DNA from: Vitrella brassicaformis CCMP3155
Taxonomy: Eukaryota; Protista; Chromerida
DNA: 10,564 nt
Direction: 5' to 3'
NCBI GenBank assembly: GCA_001179505.1
Contig: CDMY01000918.1
Coordinates: forward strand, 1 to 10,564
Shown: positions 1-10,564 of the stretch, piece after piece
Numbering within the stretch: the stretch's first letter is position 1
Layout: each line of letters opens with the position of its first letter
Notes under the pieces: model-generated
The model's input: the letters and a program-made list of their open reading frames with translations, nothing else
Databases searched by the model: none
Told to the model about the DNA's origin: nothing
Program-made: the position numbers and the translations under genes

Positions 1-27
1 CCCATCCAAGCACACCCACCCACCCCA
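1..27 (+). repeat. Terminal direct repeat, left copy (cccatccaagcacacccacccacccca)
   Basis: Exact 27-nt match to 10538-10564. Confidence 0.97.
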
Positions 28-102
28 CCGACAGCCAGACACGCCATACCAGCTCACATGTGCTGTCTGTGCTCATGTGGTGTGCAATGCATTGCAATTC
101 AG

Positions 103-987
103 AAAGTGCCGCGCCACGACCCATTCAAAGGTACCCAACAAACACACCAATCAATCAGCAACATCATGATGTGTATACCGTATGTGTGTGTGTGTGTGTT
201 CAGATTTCCGTCCGTTCCATCTGTCGATGTACGCCAAGCGGCCGCCATGGGAGAAGTTTGAGGAAATCTACAAGGCAGGCCATTGCACTGCACGCCACAC
301 ATCGAAGCATACACATGATGACCTGCTCTGTGTGTGCGTGTGTCAGGACGACGAGCCGCTTGAAGAGGAGGAAGACCTGCAGGCGCTCGAAGACATCAGA
401 AATGCACTCGATGTGAGGGAAGCGAACGAAGGGTCATGACACGTCCCTTCCTGCATGTGTGTCGACTCCACCTCCTGTCTGCATGTCCGTGTGTGTCTTT
501 CGTCGATCCATCAGGAGAGGGAGACGCTGCACACGGCGGACTTTGACGTGATTGACGACACGGGCGAGCTGAGATCGAGGTCACTCAGCGACATTGCACG
601 AGGTGGGTGCATGAAGATACCGACACCCAAACCCCCATCCATCCATCCATCCAGCCACACGCACACCTGTACGTGTCGGTATGTTGCCGTGTCTTTTTCA
701 GGTTCGTCATCTGCTGATGGGTACCTCTCAGCCCGCCACAGCCGAGACGATGAGGCCGACAATGAGGAGGAAGCCGGCGATGACGAGCAAGAGGCAAGCG
801 ACACTCACCATACACACACACACACACACACACGAATGCGTTGGCCGGACCAATGGGTGCATTGCATGTGTCTGTGTGTGTGCAGGGTGACGAAGGCGAC
901 CTGGGTGATGAAGGTTTGTCGGGCGATGAGGATGCGGACGAAGACATCGAGGATGCCGCCACGCTGCCACCTATCGACCGGACATAG
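103..987 (+). CDS. Gene A, 3' half: hypothetical protein with acidic C-terminal tail; exons 103-130, 204-274, 347-412, 515-602, 702-793, 886-987
   Basis: Hand splicing at AG acceptors and GT/GC donors keeps phase throughout. Translation: KVPRHDPFKDFRPFHLSMYAKRPPWEKFEEIYKDDEPLEEEEDLQALEDIRNALDERETLHTADFDVIDDTGELRSRSLSDIARGSSSADGYLSARHSRDDEADNEEEAGDDEQEGDEGDLGDEGLSGDEDADEDIEDAATLPPIDRT, then TAG at 985-987. No family recognised. Confidence 0.8.
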
Positions 988-1326
988 GCTGGATGGAACC
1001 AATCGTGTCTTCTGCATGATCACGCGTGTGTTAAACTTTGTCGTGTTCGTGGATGATACGCGACCCGATGCTGGCTGCGAAGAGCCCGTATGCAGTGCGT
1101 GTGTCATAATCGCGTCTGTCACTGTCCTCTCCGGTCTTTCCATGATGTCAACTCGACGGCGAGATTTCGCGATGAGACGGCGACACCACCGATTCACAGA
1201 ATTTGAGGTCCAGTTTTCACATTTCCGTCCGCGTTTGGCTTCCCAGCCTTCCTTCAGCCACAGATCCTTCATTTCTTTTTCTTTTCGCCTGGTTGTTGGC
1301 TTACGCAACACGCCTCATCCCCTTCC

Positions 1327-2533
1327 ATGCCTCCCAGCTCGTCCGGATGCCCTGCGTGTCTTCCTTCCTCCACCGCCGTGCCCCGGGCAAGGCGACAGCA
1401 GGTGGCGTCTCGCCTTCTGCCAAGCGACTGCTCCCTGGTGTCAGCAGAGGGCCCGCGCACCTTCCTCCCGCTCCAACGAGACCTCCATCAGGTTGGGATG
1501 GAGTGCCAATGGAGTGGTGTTTGGATGATAGGGATGAATGTATGATGTATTTTGTTGCTGTGTGTATGCTCATGTGTCTTCTTTCGTCATGTCTGTCTGC
1601 AGGCGAAACGGTCCTTTTCTCGATCTCAGAAGGTTGGCACAAGTGTCGAGACTGCACACTTCAATGTCTTTGTTGGCTGCTGTTCAGACGTGCGACCCCT
1701 TAGGAGCCACAGGAAGGAGACGAGCACGAGGAGGAAGGAGAAGAACACGAGGTGGATGGCATGGACGCACTACATATAATGCAATGACATGCACTCACCA
1801 ACGAGGGAGGGAGGGAGGGTCTTGAAAAGGAGGGGGAAAGCACCTCTCTCTTTCCTCTCTCTCGTTCCCTCTTTCGATTTCTCAAGTGCATGTGGCACGT
1901 GCCAGAAACATCGGCTGTTTATGCGCGTATGTGTGCTGAAACTGTTTTCTTCTTCCATCCCGTCTCTTGTCTCGACTTTGCCATGGCTGGCAGAGGGAGG
2001 GCACATGTATCTGTATGTGTTTGTGTTTGTGTGTGTCGTGCACGGCCATCCCGCCGCCTGCCAATCGCCGGCCGGCCGGTCGGTCGGCGAGGCGGATCTA
2101 GACTGCTGTGTCTTTTCGTGCTATACAGTATTCGCAAGTAAGGCACTCATTGGAGTGATTTCAACGCAGCAAGGGGAGGAGGAGGGGTGAGGGATTCCTG
2201 TATGGACAATCGGTCGGCTGCATGTCTGAGGTCCATGGGCATGGCCTTTTTTTTTCCACCAACCGGGCTGCCTGCACGCTCTTTTCGGGGAGGGAAATCA
2301 CCAACTCTTCTTCTTTTTGTCGCACTTGTCGGTCACTTTTCACTCCACCTCACCCGTGCTTCGTTCGTGTTTGTGTTTTGTGTCTGTCTGTCTGTCTGGT
2401 TGGTTGGCTAGCTGGCTGCGTCATGGGACAGTGGGACACCATCGTTGTACGTGGGGACACGGAAGACCTAGACACAACGTCAGGACTTCCGTCTGTATAC
2501 TACACAGACCAGCCACCACGCACACACACACCG
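1327..2533 (+). other. Possible degenerate or unresolved multi-exon + strand transcript
   Basis: Acceptor/donor-like pairs: donor 1492, acceptor 1602, donor 1752, and an exon-like segment 2432-2533 (WDTIVVRGDTEDLDTTSGLPSVYYTDQPPRTHTP, then GTATGT). No unique reading frame could be fixed. Confidence 0.25.
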
Positions 2534-2541
2534 GTATGTGA

Positions 2542-3003
2542 TTCACAGCCAGAAGATATAAAATGTAGGCTGCTGTAGTGAGTGTGCGCTATGGGTGGAC
2601 GGATGGATGGCTGGATGGATGGGCGAGGGACGTCGCCGGACTGACGTGCATGCGGGACGGAGGGAGACTAGGACTGGCTGTGGCTGGGTGTAATGGATGG
2701 ATAAATGGCATGACCGCAATACACACGTACGTGGTAGCCAGACCCCGATGGGGTGTGCAGGGATTCTCCTTCGTACGCTGGCTGATTGAATAGCATAGGG
2801 CGACCACACACACACACACAGAGTGGGAGAGGGAGGGGGGACAGCGACCAGAAATGACACAACAGGGGAAAAGGGAGAGGGTGACAGGCAGGAGCAGCAA
2901 ATAAGGGGCAGCCTGCGACTGGTGCTGATGTTGTTGGTGGTGAGATGGGCGGAGGATTGCGAACTGCAATCGCTACCTACATTTTATATCTTCTGGCTGT
3001 GAA
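2542..3003. mobile_element. 462-bp segment bounded by 28-bp perfect inverted repeats (MITE-like or foldback; no clear TSD)
   Basis: ttcacagccagaagatataaaatgtagg (2542-2569) is the exact reverse complement of cctacattttatatcttctggctgtgaa (2976-3003). The repeat is AT-rich against a GC-rich background. The inverted repeat is certain; the mobile-element identity is inference. Confidence 0.5.
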
Positions 3004-3010
3004 ATTATCG

Positions 3011-3099
3011 TCATGCTCTTTTGTCTGCGCTTTGTTGACTGAAATTCTTGTGAGAGAGGACGCCGTCGTCGTTTTCCAATCCATCTGTGTCTTCAATCA
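3011..3099 (-). pseudogene. Orphan terminal-exon-like fragment (VIEDTDGLENDDGVLSHKNFSQQSADKRA*)
   Basis: Acceptor ...gtcacacAG at 3101-3100, then an open frame to TGA at 3013-3011. No upstream exons identified. Confidence 0.25.
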
Positions 3100-3190
3100 C
3101 TGTGTGACAGACACTGTATGATTCGACAGGCTGAGCTCCGACAACACACACAACTTTTGACAGCCACCACACAAACACCCATAAACCACA

Positions 3191-3459
3191 CGACGATGAA
3201 GAACAAGAGGCAAGCGACACTCACCATACACACACAGACACGCGAATGCGTTGGCCGGACCAATGGGTGTATTGCCTGTGTGTGTCTGTGTGTGTGCAGG
3301 GAGACGAAGGTCTGTCAGGCAATGAGGATCCGGAAGAAGACATAGATGATGCGGACGAAGACATCGAGGATGCCGCCGTCTTGCCACCTGTCGAGAGAAC
3401 ATAAGCTTCCATCGTGTGCTCTGTAGGATTGTCTGCGCGTGTGTGTGTTTGTCGTGTTC
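3191..3459 (+). pseudogene. 5'-truncated paralogous copy of the end of gene A (penultimate exon end, last intron, last exon, start of 3' UTR)
   Basis: Aligns to ~776-1048. Reads DDEEQE|gcaagcgacactcacc...gtgcag|GDEGLSGNEDPEEDIDDADEDIEDAAVLPPVERT with TAA at 3402-3404. The GC donor (3210) is conserved, and the 3' UTR similarity (tttgtcgtgttcg) continues. Confidence 0.85.
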
Positions 3460-3821
3460 GACCTGGTGTGCTTTCTGCGCATAGCCCATATGCGATGCTT
3501 GAGTCATCCAGCGATAGCACAGCTGGACAGCACGAACTCGTCTCTCTGTCTGATGGGGTGTGCTATGTCACACGATGACATTGAAAGCCAACACAAATCA
3601 CATGAAAGCACGGCCTCTGTGTCTCAAGCATGGACCGGAGAAGCTCGCCACAGACAGACCACTGCCGATGAAGGCCGCATCCAATACACTAGTAGACAGT
3701 GTGACACCGTAGACAGACAGGCTGTCCCCGAGCCCCATCCACCTAGAGATACGATGCGAGTCCATCAGTCAGGGTCTAAACGATCAGACAGACAACCATC
3801 AGGCGAGGGAGGAGAGAACAA

Positions 3822-3944
3822 ACAGACAGACAGACAGACAGACAGCCAGCTTGGGCAGCCAGACAGCCAGACAGACAGACAGACAGAGAGACAGACGGAC
3901 GCGGACAGACGGACGCGGACAGACGGACGCGGACAGACGGACAG
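3822..3944 (+). repeat. (GACA)n microsatellite followed by a 14-bp minisatellite (acagacggacgcgg x ~3.7)
   Basis: Units at 3891-3904, 3905-3918 and 3919-3932, with a partial unit at 3933-3944; GACA tracts at 3822-3890. Confidence 0.9.
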
Positions 3945-4411
3945 CCACGGCAGGCAGGTAGGCATTGATTCCACGCAATTCGCCCAACCCAATCAATAGA
4001 TGGATGCACCCACCCAGTGCATGCGATGAGTGAAATGCAGCGCCATGCAGAGGGATGGGATGGCATGCAATGTGGTGTGGTGTGGTGTGGCGTGGTAGTA
4101 TGTATGGTGTGTGAGCTACCCTGTCTGTCTGTCTGTCTGTCGGTCGGTCGGTCGGTCTGTCTGCCATCGACCCACCCATCCCGTCCGCCCCTATCGAAGC
4201 ATACGTACCATAGGTGTCACTCAGGCATGCGCCAACAAACCAAGACACACACACGGAGAAATATATCACCACCCGACGGCCCCTGATACACACACAAACA
4301 CATATAGCGAAGACAGACAGACAGACAGACGGACGGACATGAGTGCATGAAAGGCGACGCTCGACGTGTGCACTTGTCTGACATTGACATACGTACCTGG
4401 TATGTGGATCG

Positions 4412-6117
4412 TCATTTGGCCTTGGCCTTACTCTTAGCCTTGGCCTTGCCTGCAGTCACAAGAAAGACAGAAACACACCACACAAACAAAGGACGCACTC
4501 ACGTGTGAGGGAGTAGGTCGGTGGCTGGGGGGGTAGGGGCGCACCTTTGGCTTTGGCTTTGGCTTTGGCCTTGCCCTTGGCCGCCGCCTTGGGCTTCTTG
4601 GTGCTGGGCTTGCGAACGCTCTGCGCACGCAGGGATACAGGCGGGTCAACACACGACACACACAAAACAGGACAACATAACATAACATGTGCGGTTAAAG
4701 GCCCCTGTGGCATGGTGTGGCTGACGTGTGCGTGTCCATGTGTCCGCCCGTACCGCCTTGGCCTTGTTGGCGGCAGCCGTCTTGGGTTTGGCCCCAGCGC
4801 GGGTCTTCTTGACAGCCTTCGCTTTGGCCTTGGCAGCAGGGGCAGCCCCAGCCTCAACTCCAGTATCTGACACACACACACACACGCACAGACAGAGAGA
4901 GAGAGAGACATGTCTGGGGTGATTGAGGAGGCGGCGTCCGTGTGTGCGTGTGTGGTATGGTGGTGTGTGGTGTGGTATGTGGTTTGTGTGGCGTGGGTAC
5001 CCTCAGCCGCGGCCTTGGGTTTCTTGGGTGCGGCCTTCTTGGCAGCGCCAACCACGTTCATGTTGAACTTGTACGATGCCTTGATCTGCACACAACACAC
5101 AACACACCAACACACGCCACACGTCGAGATGCACCCACCACACCATCACACCACACCATTGTCACCTACCCTCCCCCCTGTGGACGCGGTGCATATGTGT
5201 GTAAGTTTCTTACCTTGATGAGTTTCTTGGCTTCGGTCATCCGCTTGAGTGAGCTGCTGAGGTGGTACTTGGTGCGTCCGTCCTCGAAGTCGAGGGCGTA
5301 GTTGGCCTGGATGAACTTCTTGATGGCAAACAGGCTGCTGCCTGACCGGTCCTTGAGTGTGCCGATGGCCTCCTTGATCATCTCCTCATACGAAGGGTGC
5401 TTCGGGGCAGCACGCGCCTCGCCACCACAACACTTGGCCTTGCCCTTCCCCTTCGCCTTGCCCTTCGCCTCCTCCTCAGCTGAATGGTCAAGACAGACAC
5501 ATACAGACGGACATGAGGGTGTCATTCAACGAGTGGGTGGATGCGTTCATGTGTGTAAGTTGTCTCTGACCTGAGGACTTCTGCGCCGCTTTGCGGTGAG
5601 GGCGACCACCAGCAGTTGCTGCTGCTGCGGCGGCTGCGGCGGGAGCCTCCTCTGCCTCCTCGGCTTGCTCAGCGGCTGGCGGTGCTTCGGGAGCCTCGGG
5701 ACTTGGAGCCTCCCCCTCCCCATCCTCAACGCCCTCAGCAGGCTGCTCGACCTGCTCCCCGCCGCCCTCAGCCCCCTCCTCTCCCTCCCCAGCAGCCTCC
5801 TGCACGGCCTGCTCGGCGGCTGGCGGTGCCTCGGGAGCCTCGGGAACCTCCTGGCATGGCTCAAGAAGGGGAGGAGCCTGTGGGGGTAGTAGGTGCTCCT
5901 CCTCTGGAGGGGCCGCAGGCGCCATCTCTTGGTCCTCGTCCTCCTCTTGAGCAGCAGGGGGCGGTGGTGGTGGCGAAGGTGGTACAGCCATCTCCTCGTC
6001 GCCCGCTGGCGGGGCAACAGCAGCAGCGGCAGTGGCCCCGTCAACGGCCACGGCAGGCGGGGCCGTCATCGGTGCGGGGGGCGGCAACTGCGGCTCCTCT
6101 GCCTCCGCCTCGGCCAT
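4412..6117 (-). CDS. H1: Linker histone H1-family protein: acidic Pro/Ala N-region, H15 globular domain, Lys/Ala tail; 374 aa if started at ATG 6117; exons 6117-5571, 5479-5214, 5085-5001, 4866-4754, 4620-4545, 4449-4412
   Basis: All five introns are GT-AG and phase-consistent. The globular domain HPSYEEMIKEAIGTLKDRSGSSLFAIKKFIQANYALDFEDGRTKYHLSSSLKRMTEAKKLIK|IKASYKF matches the H1/H5 consensus (HP.y..Mi..AI..Lk.r.GSS..AI.K.i...y ... K.S.K.). The tail AAKKAAPKKPKAA...KAKAKSKAKAK ends at TGA 4414-4412. The start codon is uncertain (see readthrough finding). Confidence 0.92.
5065..5399 (-). other. H1/H5 winged-helix globular domain, split by intron 5213-5086
   Basis: Motif from HPSYEEMI to IKASYKF, recognised by eye from the consensus. 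Confidence 0.9.
5663..5845 (-). repeat. Two 39-bp coding repeats encoding PEAPEAPPAAEQA (5663-5701 and 5807-5845)
   Basis: Direct alignment shows 3 mismatches. Confidence 0.9.
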
Positions 6118-6141
6118 GTCGACGTCGGCTAGTGCGGGCTG

Positions 6142-8661
6142 CTACTGCTCCTGCTGCTCGGGGATGGCTGGAGGGGGCAGGGGTTGTGGTGCGGGGGCCA
6201 TGTCCATCTCCTCCTCCATCTCGGCAGCAGCTGCCATCAGATGGCCGAACATGGGCGTCTTGGGCGAGGGCGACTTGTCCTCCTCCTCGCGGTCGTCTCG
6301 GTCGCGCCTGTAGTCTCGGTCATCCCCGTCGTAGCGGCGGCGGCGGCGGTCGTACTCGTCGTCATCGTATCGCCGGGGGTAGTCCCTGTCCCTCTCGCCC
6401 GAGCGACTGCGGGCACGGTAACGGTCATAGTCACGCCCGCCACGACGGTTCCTGCAGCCAAACACGACACGACCTTGTCACCTTGTGTGTGAGTGTGCGT
6501 ATGTGTCTGTGTGTGTGTGTGTGGCTAAGCATCTGTCTCACCCATCGCGGTCGTCTCGATCGCGCCTGTAGTCTCGGTCATCCTCGTCGTAGCGGCGGCG
6601 GCGGTCGCACTCGTCGTCATCGTATCGCCGGCGGTAGTCCCTGTTCCTCTCGCGCGAGCGACTGCGGGCACGGTAACGGTCACAACCGTACCCATCGCCC
6701 TCGCCACTGCCCCGACGCCTCAGGCTGCAGACAGAGCAACAGAGACACAAACACACACACACACACACACGGTGAAGAGGTGTGTGCGTGTCTCTCCCTG
6801 TGGCGTGTACGGACGCTCACCCTTTGTCCTTCGAGAGCTTTCGCTGCTTCAGTAATGGAGTGAGTGTGTCTACGGCCGCCGGGTCCTCCTCAGAGGATGG
6901 CGAGCGCTGCAGCCGTGGCTGTCCGGATGGTGCTGATCTTGGCGGAATGGCAGCTGCTGCAGCAGCGGCCGGTGCAGGTGGCTGTGGCTGTGTTGTGTCG
7001 GTGACGATGTCCCTGTTGATGGGCGTGTGGTTGGCGCCCTGCCTGCTGGCCATGCCGGGTGTGTATGTGGGCGGGGGCGAGGTGGGCAGGGGGGCGAGGG
7101 ACGGCGAACACGAGAGGCTTCTGGCGCCTCGAGGGACTCAACGCCACCAAGACTGCATCAAGGCATCCAGCAGACGACAGACGAGGACACGAGTGACAGG
7201 CCTATCTTCCTTCGCATCTGGCTTGTCTTCTTTTACCCAGCACGATTCAGTATCCCTCCTCTTCCTGAGTCTCCCTCTCTCCCACGCTCGTGTGGCTGCG
7301 GACTCCCGACCGCAGACGGACCGCTAGGCGAGTATTCGGGCGGTGGGCGAGACCGCCGCCGTGCGTCACCCCATTCCCATTCCCATTCCTCACCATTCCC
7401 ATTCCCATTCCCCTCGTTGCCCCGGTCCAGACGACCGATGCCCAGGTCACTCGAGTCACGCGATTTGCCCCAAGGTGAGCTGGTGCGGTCAGCAGGGTGG
7501 GTAGTGGGGGGGCGGGAAGGGCTGTGGTCGTCCCTCGAGGCCTCACTGGGTGCAGCTGCGGCAGGGTGTGGCTGAGGGTCGCCACGGCGGAAAAGCTGAT
7601 AACACAAATACATGGGTGCTCTGGTGGTTGGCGTATCCTTTGTGGTCTCGGTTGCGTACCGGTGATGGTTTGTGCATCGGCTCCCTCATGGAGGCGTTGT
7701 TCCTGGGCCGCATGTCGACGTCCCTCCCAGCACCCTCACCCCCACGGCCCTGCTCTCGCTGCTCCTCGACATCCATCGGCTGCCGCACACCATCGCCGTC
7801 TCCATCCCCACCAAGTTGCAGCATTCTGTCCCTGACCGAGTCTCGCGTCAAGGGGTGCTGCATGCCGGCTCCCATATCAAGGCCGGTGGCGTGGCCCTCG
7901 CCGTTGACACGCACATCTCGGCCACGCCAACGCTCACGCTCACGGACATGCTCATCTAGCTGCGGAGGCTGCAGTTGTGGCTGTCCGGAGGGTGTTGGTC
8001 TTGGCGGAATGGCGGCAGCAGCAGCTGCTGCAGGTGCAGGTGCAGGTGGCTGTCTTGTGTCGGTGACGATGTCCCTGTTGATGGGCGTGTGGTTGGCGCC
8101 CTGCCTGCTGGCCATGCCGGCTGTGTATGTGGGCGGGGGCGAGGTGGGCAGGGGGGCGAGGGACGGCGACACACGAGAGGCTTCTGGCGCCTCGAGGGAC
8201 TCAACGCCACCAAGACTGCATCAAGGCATCCAGCAGACGACAGACAAGGACATGAGTGACAGGCCTACCTTCCTTCGCATCTGGCTTGTCTTCCTTTACC
8301 CAGCATGATTCAGCATCCCTCCTCGTCGTGAGTCTCCCTCTCTCCCACGCTCGTGTGGCTGCGGACTCCCGACCACAGACGGACCGCCAGGCGAGTACTC
8401 GGGCGGTGGGCGAGACGGCAGCCGTGACGGCGTGTCACCACCCTCACCATCCTCCCCTTCCCCATTCCCATCCCCCTCGTCGTCATCATCAGGATTACTC
8501 CAGTCCTGCCGTGTCCTCCTTCCCGGCGGGTTCAGAAACGACTCCCACGCCTCTGCGGGCCCCCGTGCTGATGCCGGGTCGGGCGCCGAGGGGTCTTCAG
8601 CAATACCAGGGGTCTGCCTGGATGAGAAGGGCAGCCCCTGCTCCTTCGCTGACGACATCAT
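6142..8661 (-). CDS. Low-complexity Pro/Ser-rich plus RS/RD-domain protein, in frame with downstream H1; exons 8661-8300, 8215-7660, 7595-7237, 7152 (or 7120)-6821, 6724-6542, 6451-6142
   Basis: GT-AG introns at 8299-8216, 7659-7596, 7236-7153 (or 7121), 6820-6725 and 6541-6452. Phases are consistent, except that exon 4 needs the 7121 acceptor or a 1-bp repair. The protein starts MMSSAKEQG, contains RYRARSRSRERNRDYRRRYDDDE, and ends ...PEQQEQ at TAG. About 689 aa with the 7121 acceptor. The start site is tentative. Confidence 0.7.
6287..6682 (-). repeat. Tandem duplication of the RS/RD-coding block (6287-6427 and 6545-6682), with copies in separate exons
   Basis: Near-identical ~140-bp blocks that differ by one CGG unit and a few substitutions. 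Confidence 0.92.
6905..8480 (-). repeat. Intragenic duplication of ~510 bp (about 6905-7420 and 7968-8480), each copy including an 84-nt intron
   Basis: The copies are offset by 1063 bp at the acceptors. The two 84-nt introns differ at 4 positions. Both encode PPPEYSP.GPS.VGSPQPHERGREGDS and GMASRQGANHTPINRDIVTD. Confidence 0.93.
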
Positions 8662-8914
8662 GGCGTCCCCTCGAAATGCGGCCCCCTTTGGCCCCCGCTG
8701 TCGAGATTTTCGCGAGTCGATCCACGGCTCGGGATAAGCATCGGACAAGGACCGCACCCATACCACCGTGTCAGCGCCATCGCCCTCGTCAATTTAAGCC
8801 CACTTTCAGCCCCATCCGCGACCAGCATCAAGATCTACGGGCACCTCGCATCTTGGGTGGCCGCCAATTCTCCACAGCTTCGAGGCCTGGCGCCACGCTG
8901 CTGCCCGCATATGA

Positions 8915-8966
8915 ACCGCATTGAAGAGCCCTACCAATCACCCATGGTGAAGCTCTTCAATGCGGT
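8915..8966. promoter_or_regulatory. Perfect 15-bp-stem inverted repeat with 22-nt loop in the region between the divergent genes
   Basis: accgcattgaagagc (8915-8929) pairs with gctcttcaatgcggt (8952-8966). The loop contains CCAAT and a small tcacc/ggtga stem. The structure is certain; a regulatory role is inference. Confidence 0.45.
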
Positions 8967-9480
8967 CTGTGAAGCCCTCCCTCGCAGTATCCCTCTGTTC
9001 GAGAAACTACCGACCGGAGATTGAGTGACCCTGGCCTCCCCTCCAGGCACCACCCGCACCAGGCTGACCACTGACGCACACTTGATAAGGTGAGGGCCAA
9101 CACAGGGCAAACGGGGACATCACAATCGCATCACAATCATCGCGATTCTCCCGTCCCCCTGTGTGCAGGCAATCACTTCGCCTTGTTCCTGTCGTGTTCC
9201 TGGTCTCCGTGCGCCAGCTTGGCTGCCTCTCCTTGACCACCACTGAGTGCGCCACCACATGGTAGCCACACCATCACCACACAATCAATCCCTCCCCTGA
9301 TGTGACCCCTTTTGTCCACCAATGTTACAGGTACCGTTTCGCTGATTGCCCGCCGACCAAGACGACGCCCGGCCCGCCTCCCCCGCCATACTCTGCGGCA
9401 CCACAAGCGCCATCAATTCCTGCCAGCCACGCAGCAGCCTGGCCACTATGGAGGTCGACAGTCAAACGCACTCAAACTTA
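8944..9480 (+). pseudogene. Possible degenerate spliced ORF or 5' UTR/uORF region upstream of gene A
   Basis: Reads MVKLFNAVCEALPRSIPLFEKLPTGD*VTLASPPGTTRTRLTTDAHLIR, with plausible introns at 9090-9168 and 9262-9330. These lead to ...WYRFADCPPTKTTPGPPPPPYSAAPQ...TQT*. There is an in-frame TGA at 9022-9024. Confidence 0.2.
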
Positions 9481-9718
9481 GACATGTGAAGGCGGCCACT
9501 TGAGGGCTCGTTGCTTCACGTGACTGATGACGGACGACTCACCCATTCGCTCGGGTACTCACACTCCGAAAAGAAGGCCAGCTCAATCGACACACATACA
9601 TATACATATGTGTATACACATGGATGGATCGATACATGTGCTGCCTTTGGGTCTCCTGTGTGCATGCAGGCACTTCTGTGTACACCTGAGCGTCGCCGCC
9701 CTCTCTCCACCCTCACCC

Positions 9719-10525
9719 ATGTCCCATGCCAAAGAGGATCCCATCGCCAAGAGGACTCGTTCCGCAGGAGCTGCCCAGCCCTCTGTCGATTTCGCACACG
9801 GCCCTGCCCGGCTGCGCGAGAGGGGCGAGGCTGCCCAGCCGTCGACCGAGCCCTCAATCTCATCCCCCGATCGACAGCCTCATTGGCCTCCAGCCAGGCG
9901 GCCTCCTCGACAACGATTCAAAGAAGGCCGTGGAACTCACAGAGGACGACCATCCATCGCACCCTTGGCCGACGGAACCTGAAACCTCTCCAGCCTCCCA
10001 GCCGACTATCGCCGCAGAGCGATTTTCGAAGGATACGACAAGAAGGTGGCGGAGACGCCCGCATGGTCGCTGTACGTGTTTTGTGGGGCCGGGATGGGTC
10101 AGATCGTCGCACTGCTGCTGGATAGTGATTGATGCTTGGAGGGTCGCACCATGCGCGGCAACGGCTACAAACGAATAGGACATGCCATACCACCACACCA
10201 TCCAAAGACTGACGACACTCACCCATTCCCAATTGCCCATTCCACCCCTTGCTTGTATCATGTATGTGTGCCTGCAGAATCGACTGGTGGTCGATGAGGA
10301 GCATCCATTCATTCTACCTCCTCAAAGCCGTCAGGACGGAAAACGAGGAGGTGTGTGAAGAAAGACACAGATGAGATGCAGACAGACAGACGTCAGCTTA
10401 AGGTCTATCCATGTGTGTGGCTGTGCATCGATCTGCCTGTTGGTCATGTGCGTGTGTGTCAGTCTGCTTTGTTCCGCGAGCTGCGCAAGTGGAAGTGGAA
10501 CTACGAAGAGCTCAAAGGACCGCTG
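9719..10525 (+). CDS. Gene A, 5' half; exons 9719-10071 (three apparent 1-bp deletions), 10278-10350, 10463-10525; continues at 103 across the window junction
   Basis: ATG at 9719 follows an acceptor at ~9669. Donors GTACGT (10072), GTGTGT (10351) and GTATGC (10526) have consistent phases: ...PADYRRRAIFEGYDKKVAETPAWSL|IDWWSMRSIHSFYLLKAVRTENEE|SALFRELRKWKWNYEELKGPL. The last exon ends in phase 0, matching exon 103-130. Confidence 0.7.
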
Positions 10526-10537
10526 GTATGCATCCCT

Positions 10538-10564
10538 CCCATCCAAGCACACCCACCCACCCCA
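10538..10564 (+). repeat. Terminal direct repeat, right copy
   Basis: Exact 27-nt match to 1-27; lies inside an intron that opens with GTATG at 10526. Confidence 0.97.

What the first reader, a model, noticed from the sequence alone, without database searches (positions are those of the whole stretch)
1..10564. Window closes on itself: a spliced gene runs across the end-to-start junction (10,537-bp circle or tandem unit)
Seen: the last 27 nt equal the first 27 nt. Joining them makes one 114-nt GT-AG intron (10526-10537 plus 1-102), within the 64-134 nt range of the other introns. It fuses ...EELKGPL to KVPRHDPFK... in phase 0. Inference: this is either an extrachromosomal circle carrying two divergent genes (H1 and gene A) with their shared upstream region, or a collapsed head-to-tail array of a 10.5-kb H1-containing unit. 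A pure assembly artefact is less likely to give a phase-correct gene, but collapse of a tandem array would.
Basis: partly seen in the sequence, partly recalled or inferred. Interest (0 to 1): 0.8.

Follow-up and report, generated by a model that had tools for sequence, protein, structure and literature searches.

The report
Unplaced scaffold piece, not a circle
The window's matching ends lie in a 110-base stretch it shares exactly with a large chromosome scaffold, so it is most likely a 10.5-kb piece the assembler left out of that scaffold, not a DNA circle or a repeated gene array.

Summary
The last 27 nt equal the first 27 nt, and two transcript contigs confirm the splice 10525->103. The circle or collapsed-array reading is not the best one.

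The window is a whole 10,564-bp scaffold (C918) of the Vitrella brassicaformis CCMP3155 short-read assembly. Both its ends lie inside a 110-nt block that is identical to C305:373049-373158 on a 520-kb scaffold. That exceeds the assembler's k of 75.

- **Window start:** the exons here (103-987) are the conserved C-terminal extension of mitochondrial ribosomal protein uL4m. Its only L4-domain part lies on C305, just upstream of the block. Read with C305's own downstream exons, uL4m is frameshifted, because exon 4 is 70 nt rather than 71. Read with the window's exons, it is intact.
- **Window end:** the exons here (8686-10525) are found in transcript contig L034 spliced to C305's downstream exons, at 100% identity on both sides.

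The likeliest true order is therefore C305[..373125] + window[1..10537] + C305[373126..]. That makes two diverged direct copies of the uL4m 3' part about 10.5 kb apart, with histone H1 between them. A several-copy array or a circle is not excluded, but nothing here requires either. This is ordinary: an assembly and annotation correction.

The parts
1..27 (.). Terminal 27-mer, first copy. It is also present once at C305:373126-373152.
10538..10564 (.). Terminal 27-mer, second copy.
10461..10564 (+). First 104 nt of the 110-nt block that is identical to C305:373049-373158. The window's right end stops inside this block.
1..33 (+). Last 33 nt of the same 110-nt identical block. The window's left end starts inside the block.
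103..987 (+). Six 3' exons and the stop codon of the uL4m C-terminal extension: 103-130, 204-274, 347-412, 515-602, 702-793, 886-987. The introns at 275-346 and 794-885 are GC-AG. The stretch is annotated as the 5'-partial protein CEM36992.1 (P0005). Its inferred 5' continuation is the uL4m exons at C305:370750-372958.
988..1171 (+). Probable 3' UTR of that gene. It is homologous to the transcribed C305:374050-374308 at 95% identity.
8686..10350 (+). Four 5' exons of a transcribed chimeric partial duplicate: 8686-9089, 9169-9261, 9331-9554, 9670-10350. All introns are GT-AG. No Pfam domain was found. The last 31 nt (10320-10350) are a relic of the uL4m exon that encodes AVRTENVE at C305:372421-372451.
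10463..10525 (+). Exon encoding SALFRELRKWKWNYEELKGPL, the conserved KWKW motif of uL4m. It is identical to C305:373051-373113.
10526..10537 (+). First 12 nt of the intron (donor GT). The intron continues either into window 1-102 (114 nt in total) or into C305:373126-373198 (85 nt in total).
1..102 (+). The remaining 102 nt of the 114-nt intron, with acceptor AG at 101-102.
5208..5399 (-). Linker histone H1/H5 globular domain. It is part of a multi-exon H1 gene on the minus strand at about 4400-6117, with a K/A-rich tail at 4456-5115.
   Evidence: PF00538, E = 1.6e-20
3191..3460 (+). A further degenerate copy of the uL4m last-exon region. It is 74-92% identical to window 775-1049.

Best explanation
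The window is a single-copy 10,537-bp stretch of chromosome that the short-read assembly left out of scaffold C305. It is not a closed molecule.

**Proposed structure.** The chromosome carries two diverged direct copies of the 3' part of the mitochondrial ribosomal protein uL4m gene. Each copy is about 2 kb, and they lie about 10.5 kb apart. The copies share a 110-nt identical block, made of one exon plus the start of the next intron. This block is longer than the Velvet k-mer of 75.

**How the artefact arose.** The assembler or the gap closers joined the sequence left of the first block copy directly to the sequence right of the second. That join made C305 contiguous across one block copy. 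The stretch in between was left as an orphan scaffold with part of the block at each end, which is the 27-nt overlap. The true order would be C305[..373125] + window[1..10537] + C305[373126..].

**What the genes then look like.**
- The real uL4m gene is the C305 exons 370750-372958, then the block exon, then window exons 103-987. This gives an intact, conserved frame.
- Window exons 8686-10525 plus C305 exons 373199-374308 form a transcribed, 5'-replaced and internally deleted duplicate that is frameshifted by 1 nt.
- The H1 gene and the rest of the window simply lie between the two copies.

**Shown:**
- the shared block and the position of both window ends inside it;
- the transcript that links the window end to C305-right;
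- the conserved uL4m frame, and the frameshift in C305-type exon 4.

**Inferred:**
- the reciprocal join of C305-left to the window start;
- a copy number of one.
For: 1. **Source.** The genome is the Vitrella brassicaformis CCMP3155 assembly, 72.7 Mb in 1064 scaffolds. It was built with Velvet at k=75, then SSPACE, GapFiller, IMAGE and REAPR.
2. **Shared block.** Both window ends fall inside a 110-nt exact match to C305:373049-373158. C305 is gap-free there.
3. **Transcript link.** Transcript contig L034 (2162 nt) maps at 100% to window 8695-10350 in four exons, found nowhere else in the genome. It then passes through the shared exons and maps at 100% to C305:373287-374308. The window's own copies of these exons match at only 93-96%, apart from one exon that is identical in both. 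The MMETSP protein P0001 shows the same join.
4. **Single 5' part.** The Ribosomal_L4 domain part of uL4m exists only at C305:370750-372672.
5. **Conserved frame.** Orthologues from Chromera, coccidia and dinoflagellates conserve EKKER, 16 residues, KWKW, KGPLKVPR.DP, FR, PPWEK and DDEPLEEE. The last C305-left exon (372893-372958, donor GT, phase 0) together with window exons reproduces this with the same 16-residue spacing.
6. **Frameshift.** C305-type exon 4 is 70 nt and the window's is 71 nt. The annotated C305 protein CEM01546.1 therefore reads 31 residues in a non-conserved frame exactly there.
7. **Defects sort into one copy.** Under this order, the missing L4 part, the loss of about 470 nt, and the 1-nt deletion all fall in one copy. 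The other copy is intact.
8. **Why it stayed unplaced.** A scaffolder cannot insert a scaffold into a contiguous contig. That explains why the piece stayed unplaced.
Against: - **No direct read of the reciprocal join.** No read-level or long-read data could be examined, so no molecule was seen to carry the join from C305-left to the window start.
- **L035 and P0006.** Transcript contig L035 and protein P0006 join the window's 5' exons to a window-like exon 4, matching at 5 of 6 diagnostic sites including the extra T. That is what a window-end to window-start junction would give. However, their exons 5, 7, 8 and 3' UTR are C305-type. The simplest reading is a bubble choice in short-read transcript assembly.
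- **L034 could be chimeric.** By the same argument, L034 could be a chimera formed across the 91 nt of identical exons.
- **No Vitrella uL4m transcript.** No transcript-derived full-length uL4m from Vitrella was found to confirm which tail it carries.
- **Overlap length.** The 27-nt overlap is not predicted by simple k=75 arithmetic, which gives 38 nt.
- **REAPR.** The authors' REAPR check with mate pairs did not break C305 at this point.
Confidence: 0.72

Rival explanations
1. A collapsed tandem array embedded in C305. Two or more near-identical copies of the 10,537-bp unit sit head to tail at C305:373126. Real window-end to window-start junctions would then exist alongside the two junctions with C305.
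For: - The graph topology is the same as in the best explanation, so the ends still close through the block.
- L035 and P0006 join the window's 5' exons to a window-like exon 4 with an intact conserved frame.
- The region has a history of local duplication: a third relic at 3191-3460 and H1-like pieces on C305.
Against: - Both transcript contigs that carry the window's 5' exons have C305-type exons 5, 7, 8 and 3' UTR. No window-type tail was found joined to those 5' exons.
- With two or more units, window-type tails should be at least as common as C305-type tails.
- No depth information supports extra copies.
Confidence: 0.1
2. An extrachromosomal circular DNA of 10,537 bp, or an isolated array elsewhere. 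It would carry H1 and an intact short gene made of window 8686-10525 plus 103-987. C305 would then be correct as assembled.
For: - The ends overlap exactly, and the junction gives a phase-correct GT-AG intron.
- No other scaffold carries near-identical flanks.
- L035 exon 4 is window-like.
Against: - The closure is fully explained by a block shared with C305.
- L034 links the window end to C305-specific exons and UTR at 100%.
- The organism's only uL4m would then lack its conserved C-terminal frame.
- Nothing in the window suggests a replication or maintenance function.
Confidence: 0.04
3. A patchwork of three or more copies. The uL4m 3' region exists in more copies than were assembled, and both scaffolds are mosaics whose segments were swapped at other identical blocks (78 nt and 136 nt). 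Neither the simple insertion nor the cycle would then describe the chromosome.
For: - Three blocks of at least 75 nt are shared by the window and C305.
- L035 exon 4 is a third haplotype that differs by 1 nt from the window's.
- Both transcript contigs differ from the window at one base within 9330-9559.
Against: - L034 is 100% identical to C305 across every diagnostic site of exons 4-8 and 362 nt of exon 8 plus UTR. It is also 100% identical to the window over three of its four 5' exons, with one mismatch in the 230-nt exon. Both arms therefore look like faithful haplotypes.
- The single-base differences can be strain SNPs or polishing errors.
Confidence: 0.12

Closest known systems
Repeat-bounded orphan contig that looks circular in a short-read de Bruijn assembly
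   Same: - Both contig ends stop inside a repeat longer than k that is shared with another scaffold.
- The other scaffold runs straight across one copy of the repeat.
- The terminal overlap mimics circularity.
   Different: - The repeat here is only 110 nt. It is an exon plus intron start of a diverged gene duplicate, so the false closure also produces a phase-correct spliced gene.
- The exact overlap of 27 nt does not equal k-1.
Tandemly repeated histone gene units, such as the classical head-to-tail histone repeats of sea urchins and Drosophila (from general knowledge)
   Same: The window holds a histone gene (H1) inside a stretch that seems to repeat head to tail with a period of about 10.5 kb.
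   Different: - No second near-identical unit was found.
- H1 paralogues elsewhere are 83-93% identical and in other contexts, or inverted.
- Only the 2-kb uL4m 3' part is duplicated in direct order.
Eukaryotic extrachromosomal circular DNA (eccDNA)
   Same: The sequence closes on itself, the size is in the kilobase range, and it carries whole genes.
   Different: - The junction is not unique to the element.
- One end is joined to chromosomal sequence in a transcript.
- No read, depth or nuclease evidence is available.
Alveolate mitochondrial ribosomal protein uL4m with a long C-terminal extension (Toxoplasma, Neospora, Cystoisospora, Chromera and dinoflagellate orthologues, P0007-P0042)
   Same: Window exons 10463-10525 and 103-987 encode the conserved KWKW, KVPR.DP, FR, PPWEK, DDEPLEEE and LPP(I/V)D extension, with the same spacing.
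   Different: - The window lacks the Ribosomal_L4 domain itself, which lies on C305.
- A second, decayed copy of the extension is transcribed from a foreign 5' end.

Membership tests
Extrachromosomal circular DNA | The closure junction is unique to the element and is not explained by a repeat shared with a chromosome. | tested here: not met
   The junction lies in a 110-nt block identical to C305:373049-373158. The 27-mer is also present in C305.
Extrachromosomal circular DNA | Neither end continues into chromosomal sequence. | tested here: not met
   Transcript L034 continues from window 10525 into C305-specific exons and UTR at 100% identity. This is RNA-level evidence, and an assembled contig.
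Extrachromosomal circular DNA | Physical circularity: exonuclease resistance, outward-facing read pairs, and long reads no longer than one unit. | not testable with these tools
   No reads or wet-lab data were available.
Collapsed head-to-tail tandem array | Two or more near-identical units, with the unit-to-unit junction seen in an independent molecule. | tested here: inconclusive
   L035 and P0006 join the window's 5' exons to a window-like exon 4, but then carry a C305-type tail. L034 shows the junction with C305 instead.
Collapsed head-to-tail tandem array | Raised read depth compared with single-copy flanks. | not testable with these tools
   No read data were available.
Repeat-bounded unplaced segment (assembly artefact) | Both ends lie inside an exact repeat longer than the assembler's k that is shared with another scaffold. 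| tested here: met
   The block is 110 nt and Velvet's k was 75.
Repeat-bounded unplaced segment (assembly artefact) | The other scaffold is contiguous across a single copy of the repeat. | tested here: met
   C305:370001-390000 contains no N. The alignment runs straight through the block.
Repeat-bounded unplaced segment (assembly artefact) | Independent evidence joins each end of the segment to the other scaffold. | tested here: inconclusive
   - **Right end:** met, by L034 and P0001.
- **Left end:** inferred only. The evidence is the single-copy uL4m 5' part and the conserved frame, which closes only with window exons.
uL4m (mitochondrial ribosomal protein L4) | Ribosomal_L4 domain (PF00573). 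| tested here: not met
   The domain is absent from the window. It is present at C305:370750-372672 and in P0004 residues 141-331 with E = 8e-39. The window holds only the gene's 3' part.
uL4m (mitochondrial ribosomal protein L4) | The alveolate-type C-terminal extension is conserved in frame. | tested here: met
   P0005 and P0006 align with the extension of eight orthologues. BLASTP of P0006 against P0008 gives 43% identity over 111 residues, E = 4e-17.
Linker histone H1/H5 | Winged-helix globular domain (PF00538). | tested here: met
   ORF 5166-5525 on the minus strand, E = 1.6e-20, 73.5 bits.

The most novel reading that the evidence does not exclude
The 10,537-bp unit (H1 plus a short, intact gene derived from the uL4m tail) really is repeated head to tail in several near-identical copies at C305:373126, or is excised as a circle. 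Window-end to window-start junctions would then exist in the cell, as the window-like exon 4 in transcript L035 hints.
Probability: 0.12. Interest if true: 0.4.

Novelty: not a real feature. Interest (0 to 1): 0.14.

Why it matters
- **For curators.**
  - Scaffold CDMY01 C918 probably belongs inside the 520-kb scaffold C305.
  - The annotated uL4m protein CEM01546.1 carries a 31-residue out-of-frame stretch and the wrong tail.
  - CEM36992.1 is probably the true 3' end of that gene.
- **For scans of short-read eukaryote assemblies.** This is a clean example of a terminal overlap, and even a phase-correct spliced gene across it, arising from a short exact block shared by diverged paralogues. 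Matching ends alone should not be read as a circle or an array.
- **For biology.** What remains is an ordinary local duplication that produced a transcribed, decaying chimeric copy of the uL4m tail.

Tried and rejected
- **Velvet overlap arithmetic.** The paper gives k=75. With a 110-nt block, simple arithmetic predicts a 38-nt overlap, not 27. The exact length stays unexplained.
- **Metagenome scans for window-type transcripts.** I scanned metagenome contigs with a window-specific exon-4 pattern and found nothing. A control pattern from an exon that L034 certainly contains was also blank. That collection evidently does not hold or show those samples, so says nothing.
- **Exact look-ups.** Look-ups of ORF 455-1528, P0001, P0004 and P0006 in the look-up of encoding contigs found nothing on record.
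- **Vitrella uL4m transcript.** I searched with P0004 residues 230-542 for a transcript-derived Vitrella uL4m. Only orthologues of 61% identity or less came back, so the reciprocal join could not be checked at RNA level.
- **Pfam scans.** Scans of ORFs in window 8686-10350 and in the 5' part of L034 gave no family.
- **Long-read assembly.** A literature search for a long-read Vitrella assembly found none in the library.
- **Earlier notes.** A word search for similar closing scaffolds gave nothing directly usable.
- **Chance repeat rejected.** I considered that the 27-mer was a chance low-complexity repeat. It occurs only three times in the genome, and the homology runs through it on both sides.
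- **Joined spliced model not searched.** I did not build or search a joined spliced protein. I used exon-by-exon references and transcript-derived proteins already in the database instead.


Full report
**Observation.**
The first 27 and last 27 bases of the window are identical. No longer suffix-prefix overlap exists, and the window has no Ns. The 27-mer is not a common repeat. With up to two mismatches allowed, it occurs three times in the genome: at the two window ends and at C305:373126-373152. The reversed control found none. Joining the ends gives a 114-nt GT-AG intron between exon 10463-10525 and exon 103-130, in phase 0.

**Source.**
The window is a complete scaffold, C918, of a 72,700,666-bp genome in 1064 scaffolds. 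Proteins encoded on it and on its neighbour are named Vitrella brassicaformis CCMP3155 in public records. The size and scaffold count match the published assembly (PMC4501334). That assembly used Velvet at k=75, then SSPACE, GapFiller, iCORN and IMAGE, then REAPR breaking and re-scaffolding. It is a chromerid alga, not human. The 27-nt overlap is therefore not a k-1 overlap of the assembler.

**A paralogous locus on a large scaffold.**
Scaffold C305 is 520,232 bp. Its stretch 372421-374740 is homologous to window 10320..10537 followed by 1..1759, and the window's end-to-start junction is contiguous there.
- Around the junction the two sequences are identical for 110 nt: window 10461-10537 plus 1-33 equals C305:373049-373158.
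- The window starts at position 78 of this block and ends at position 104.
- The block exceeds k=75, so it is a collapsed node with two ways in and two ways out.
- Two further shared blocks of 78 nt and 136 nt lie downstream.

The closing ends therefore allow three topologies:
- a separate cycle, either a circle or an isolated array;
- a single insertion of the window into C305 at the block;
- several tandem units inserted there.

**What the genes are.**
A word search with an ORF covering window exons found two transcript-derived Vitrella proteins. A second search, cluster look-ups and contig look-ups added the rest:
- two JGI transcript contigs, L034 and L035;
- the annotated partial protein of the window start (CEM36992.1, P0005);
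- the annotated C305 protein (CEM01546.1, P0004, 542 aa), named uL4m by UniRef.

P0004 has a Ribosomal_L4 domain at residues 141-331. The exons for residues 1-356 occur only at C305:370750-372672. The window's last 5' exon ends in a 31-nt relic of the uL4m exon that encodes AVRTENVE. The window and C305 thus hold two copies of the uL4m 3' part. The copy entered from the window's end has lost about 470 nt, or roughly three exons, and has no L4 domain.

**The conserved frame.**
An alignment with orthologues from Chromera, coccidia, dinoflagellates and others shows a conserved C-terminal extension: EKKER, 16 residues, KWKW, KGPLKVPR.DP, FR, PPWEK, DDEPLEEE, LPP(I/V)D.
- The last uL4m exon on C305-left (372893-372958) ends in phase 0 at a GT donor and encodes VPGWNKEWVEKKERQKNTQYDR.
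- The block exon then encodes SALFRELRKWKWNYEELKGPL, and window exon 103-130 encodes KVPRHDPFK.
- The window's 71-nt exon 4 continues in frame through to the stop at 985-987. The seven exons total 510 nt and are all in phase.
- This reproduces the orthologue pattern with exactly 16 residues between EKKER and KWKW.
- C305's own exon 4 is 70 nt. The annotated P0004 escapes the frameshift by using another donor. It reads 31 residues in a frame that has no similarity to orthologues at just that place.

With C305 as assembled, the organism's only uL4m lacks a conserved motif. With the window's exons, it is intact.

**Transcript evidence.**
L034 is 2162 nt, from JGI sample 3300017148. It maps at 100% to window 8695-9090, 9167-9264 and 9669-10350, and at 99.6% to window 9330-9559. 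All these introns are GT-AG on the plus strand. It then runs through the shared exons, and then maps at 100% to C305:373287-373359, 373793-373884 and 373947-374308, and at 98.7% to 373436-373511. The window's copies of these four exons match at only 93-96%; one further exon is identical in both scaffolds. A genome-wide search confirms that the 5' part matches at this level only the window, and that the diagnostic 3' exons and UTR match at 100% only C305. The MMETSP protein P0001 shows the same join. This is what the insertion model predicts for the decayed copy.

L035 (sample 3300017297) and protein P0006 have the same 5' exons and the same C305-type exons 5, 7, 8 and UTR. Their exon 4 is window-like at five of six diagnostic sites, including the extra T. 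I read this as one bubble choice in short-read transcript assembly, between the uL4m mRNA and the duplicate's mRNA. These two mRNAs share 91 nt of identical exons upstream and about 75 nt downstream. It is also the only hint of a window-to-window junction.

No transcript-derived protein links the window's 5' exons to a window-type tail. No full-length transcript-derived uL4m of Vitrella was found.

**Conclusion.**
The best-supported order is C305[..373125] + window[1..10537] + C305[373126..].
- The three defects then fall in one transcribed, decaying duplicate. They are the missing L4 part, the 470-nt loss and the 1-nt deletion.
- The essential gene is whole.
- The piece stayed unplaced because a scaffolder cannot insert it into a contiguous contig.
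- H1 (PF00538, E = 1.6e-20) and the rest of the window lie between the two copies.

C305 downstream (374735-379027) holds H1-like and other pieces of the window in inverted order at 78-93%. The larger region therefore has an older history of duplication and rearrangement.

My estimates are about 0.72 for the single insertion, 0.10 for several tandem units at that site, 0.04 for a circle or isolated array, and 0.12 for a more complex patchwork of copies.

**Limits.**
- No reads, depth or long reads were available.
- The reciprocal join rests on reading-frame conservation.
- The exact overlap length of 27 nt is unexplained.
- I did not build or search a joined spliced model. I used exon references and database proteins derived from transcripts.

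Noticed in passing
window 1157-1493: A dispersed repeat of about 340 bp, just downstream of the uL4m 3' UTR. More than 40 copies at 70-79% identity lie on many scaffolds, several as pairs about 640-680 bp apart, for example C283:67749/68392, C748:270464/271114 and C690:1950/2618. It is also present in C305 at about 374220-374536. Its nature is unknown.
   Followed up: no
window 275-346 and 794-885: Two GC-AG introns in the uL4m tail. The same exon-exon joins are seen in transcript contigs L034 and L035.
   Followed up: partly
window 3191-3460: A third, degenerate copy of the uL4m last-exon region, 74-92% identical to window 775-1049 and offset by about 2.4 kb. It shows repeated local duplication.
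   Followed up: partly
L023 (C305:370001-380000), positions 2932-3289, i.e. C305:372932-373289: The public protein CEM01546.1 (P0004, uL4m) uses a donor at about C305:372932 and reads exons 2-3 in a non-conserved frame (residues about 375-405). This absorbs a 1-nt shorter exon 4. It is probably a model fitted to a mis-joined scaffold.
   Followed up: yes
window 8686-9554: The first three 5' exons of the chimeric transcript have paralogues with the same three-exon layout at C212:1389-2067 (82-89%) and C729:22939-23716 (82-86%). The duplicate seems to have captured the 5' end of a member of an uncharacterised gene family. No Pfam hit was found.
   Followed up: partly
window 6276-6682 and 6906-8426: Internal direct repeats: 6276-6427 against 6534-6682 (83-93%, offset about 256 nt), and 6906-7363 against 7968-8426 (92-95%, offset 1063 nt). 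They lie in the GC-rich stretch upstream of H1 that encodes R/D-rich ORFs on the minus strand.
   Followed up: no
window 2542-2569 and 2976-3003: A perfect 28-nt inverted repeat with 406 nt between the arms. It could be the ends of a small foldback or terminal-inverted-repeat element.
   Followed up: no
window 9330-9559 and 259: Both transcript contigs differ from the window at one base within 9330-9559. L035 has A where the window has G at about position 259 in exon 4; the change is synonymous. This could be a strain SNP, a polishing error or a further copy.
   Followed up: no
window 6100-6160: Another first-stage note (s1-205573) proposes that an in-frame TAG joins an R/D-rich ORF (6142-6465, minus strand) to the H1 N-terminal ORF (5488-6117, minus strand). 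The two ORFs are adjacent as listed. I did not examine this.
   Followed up: no
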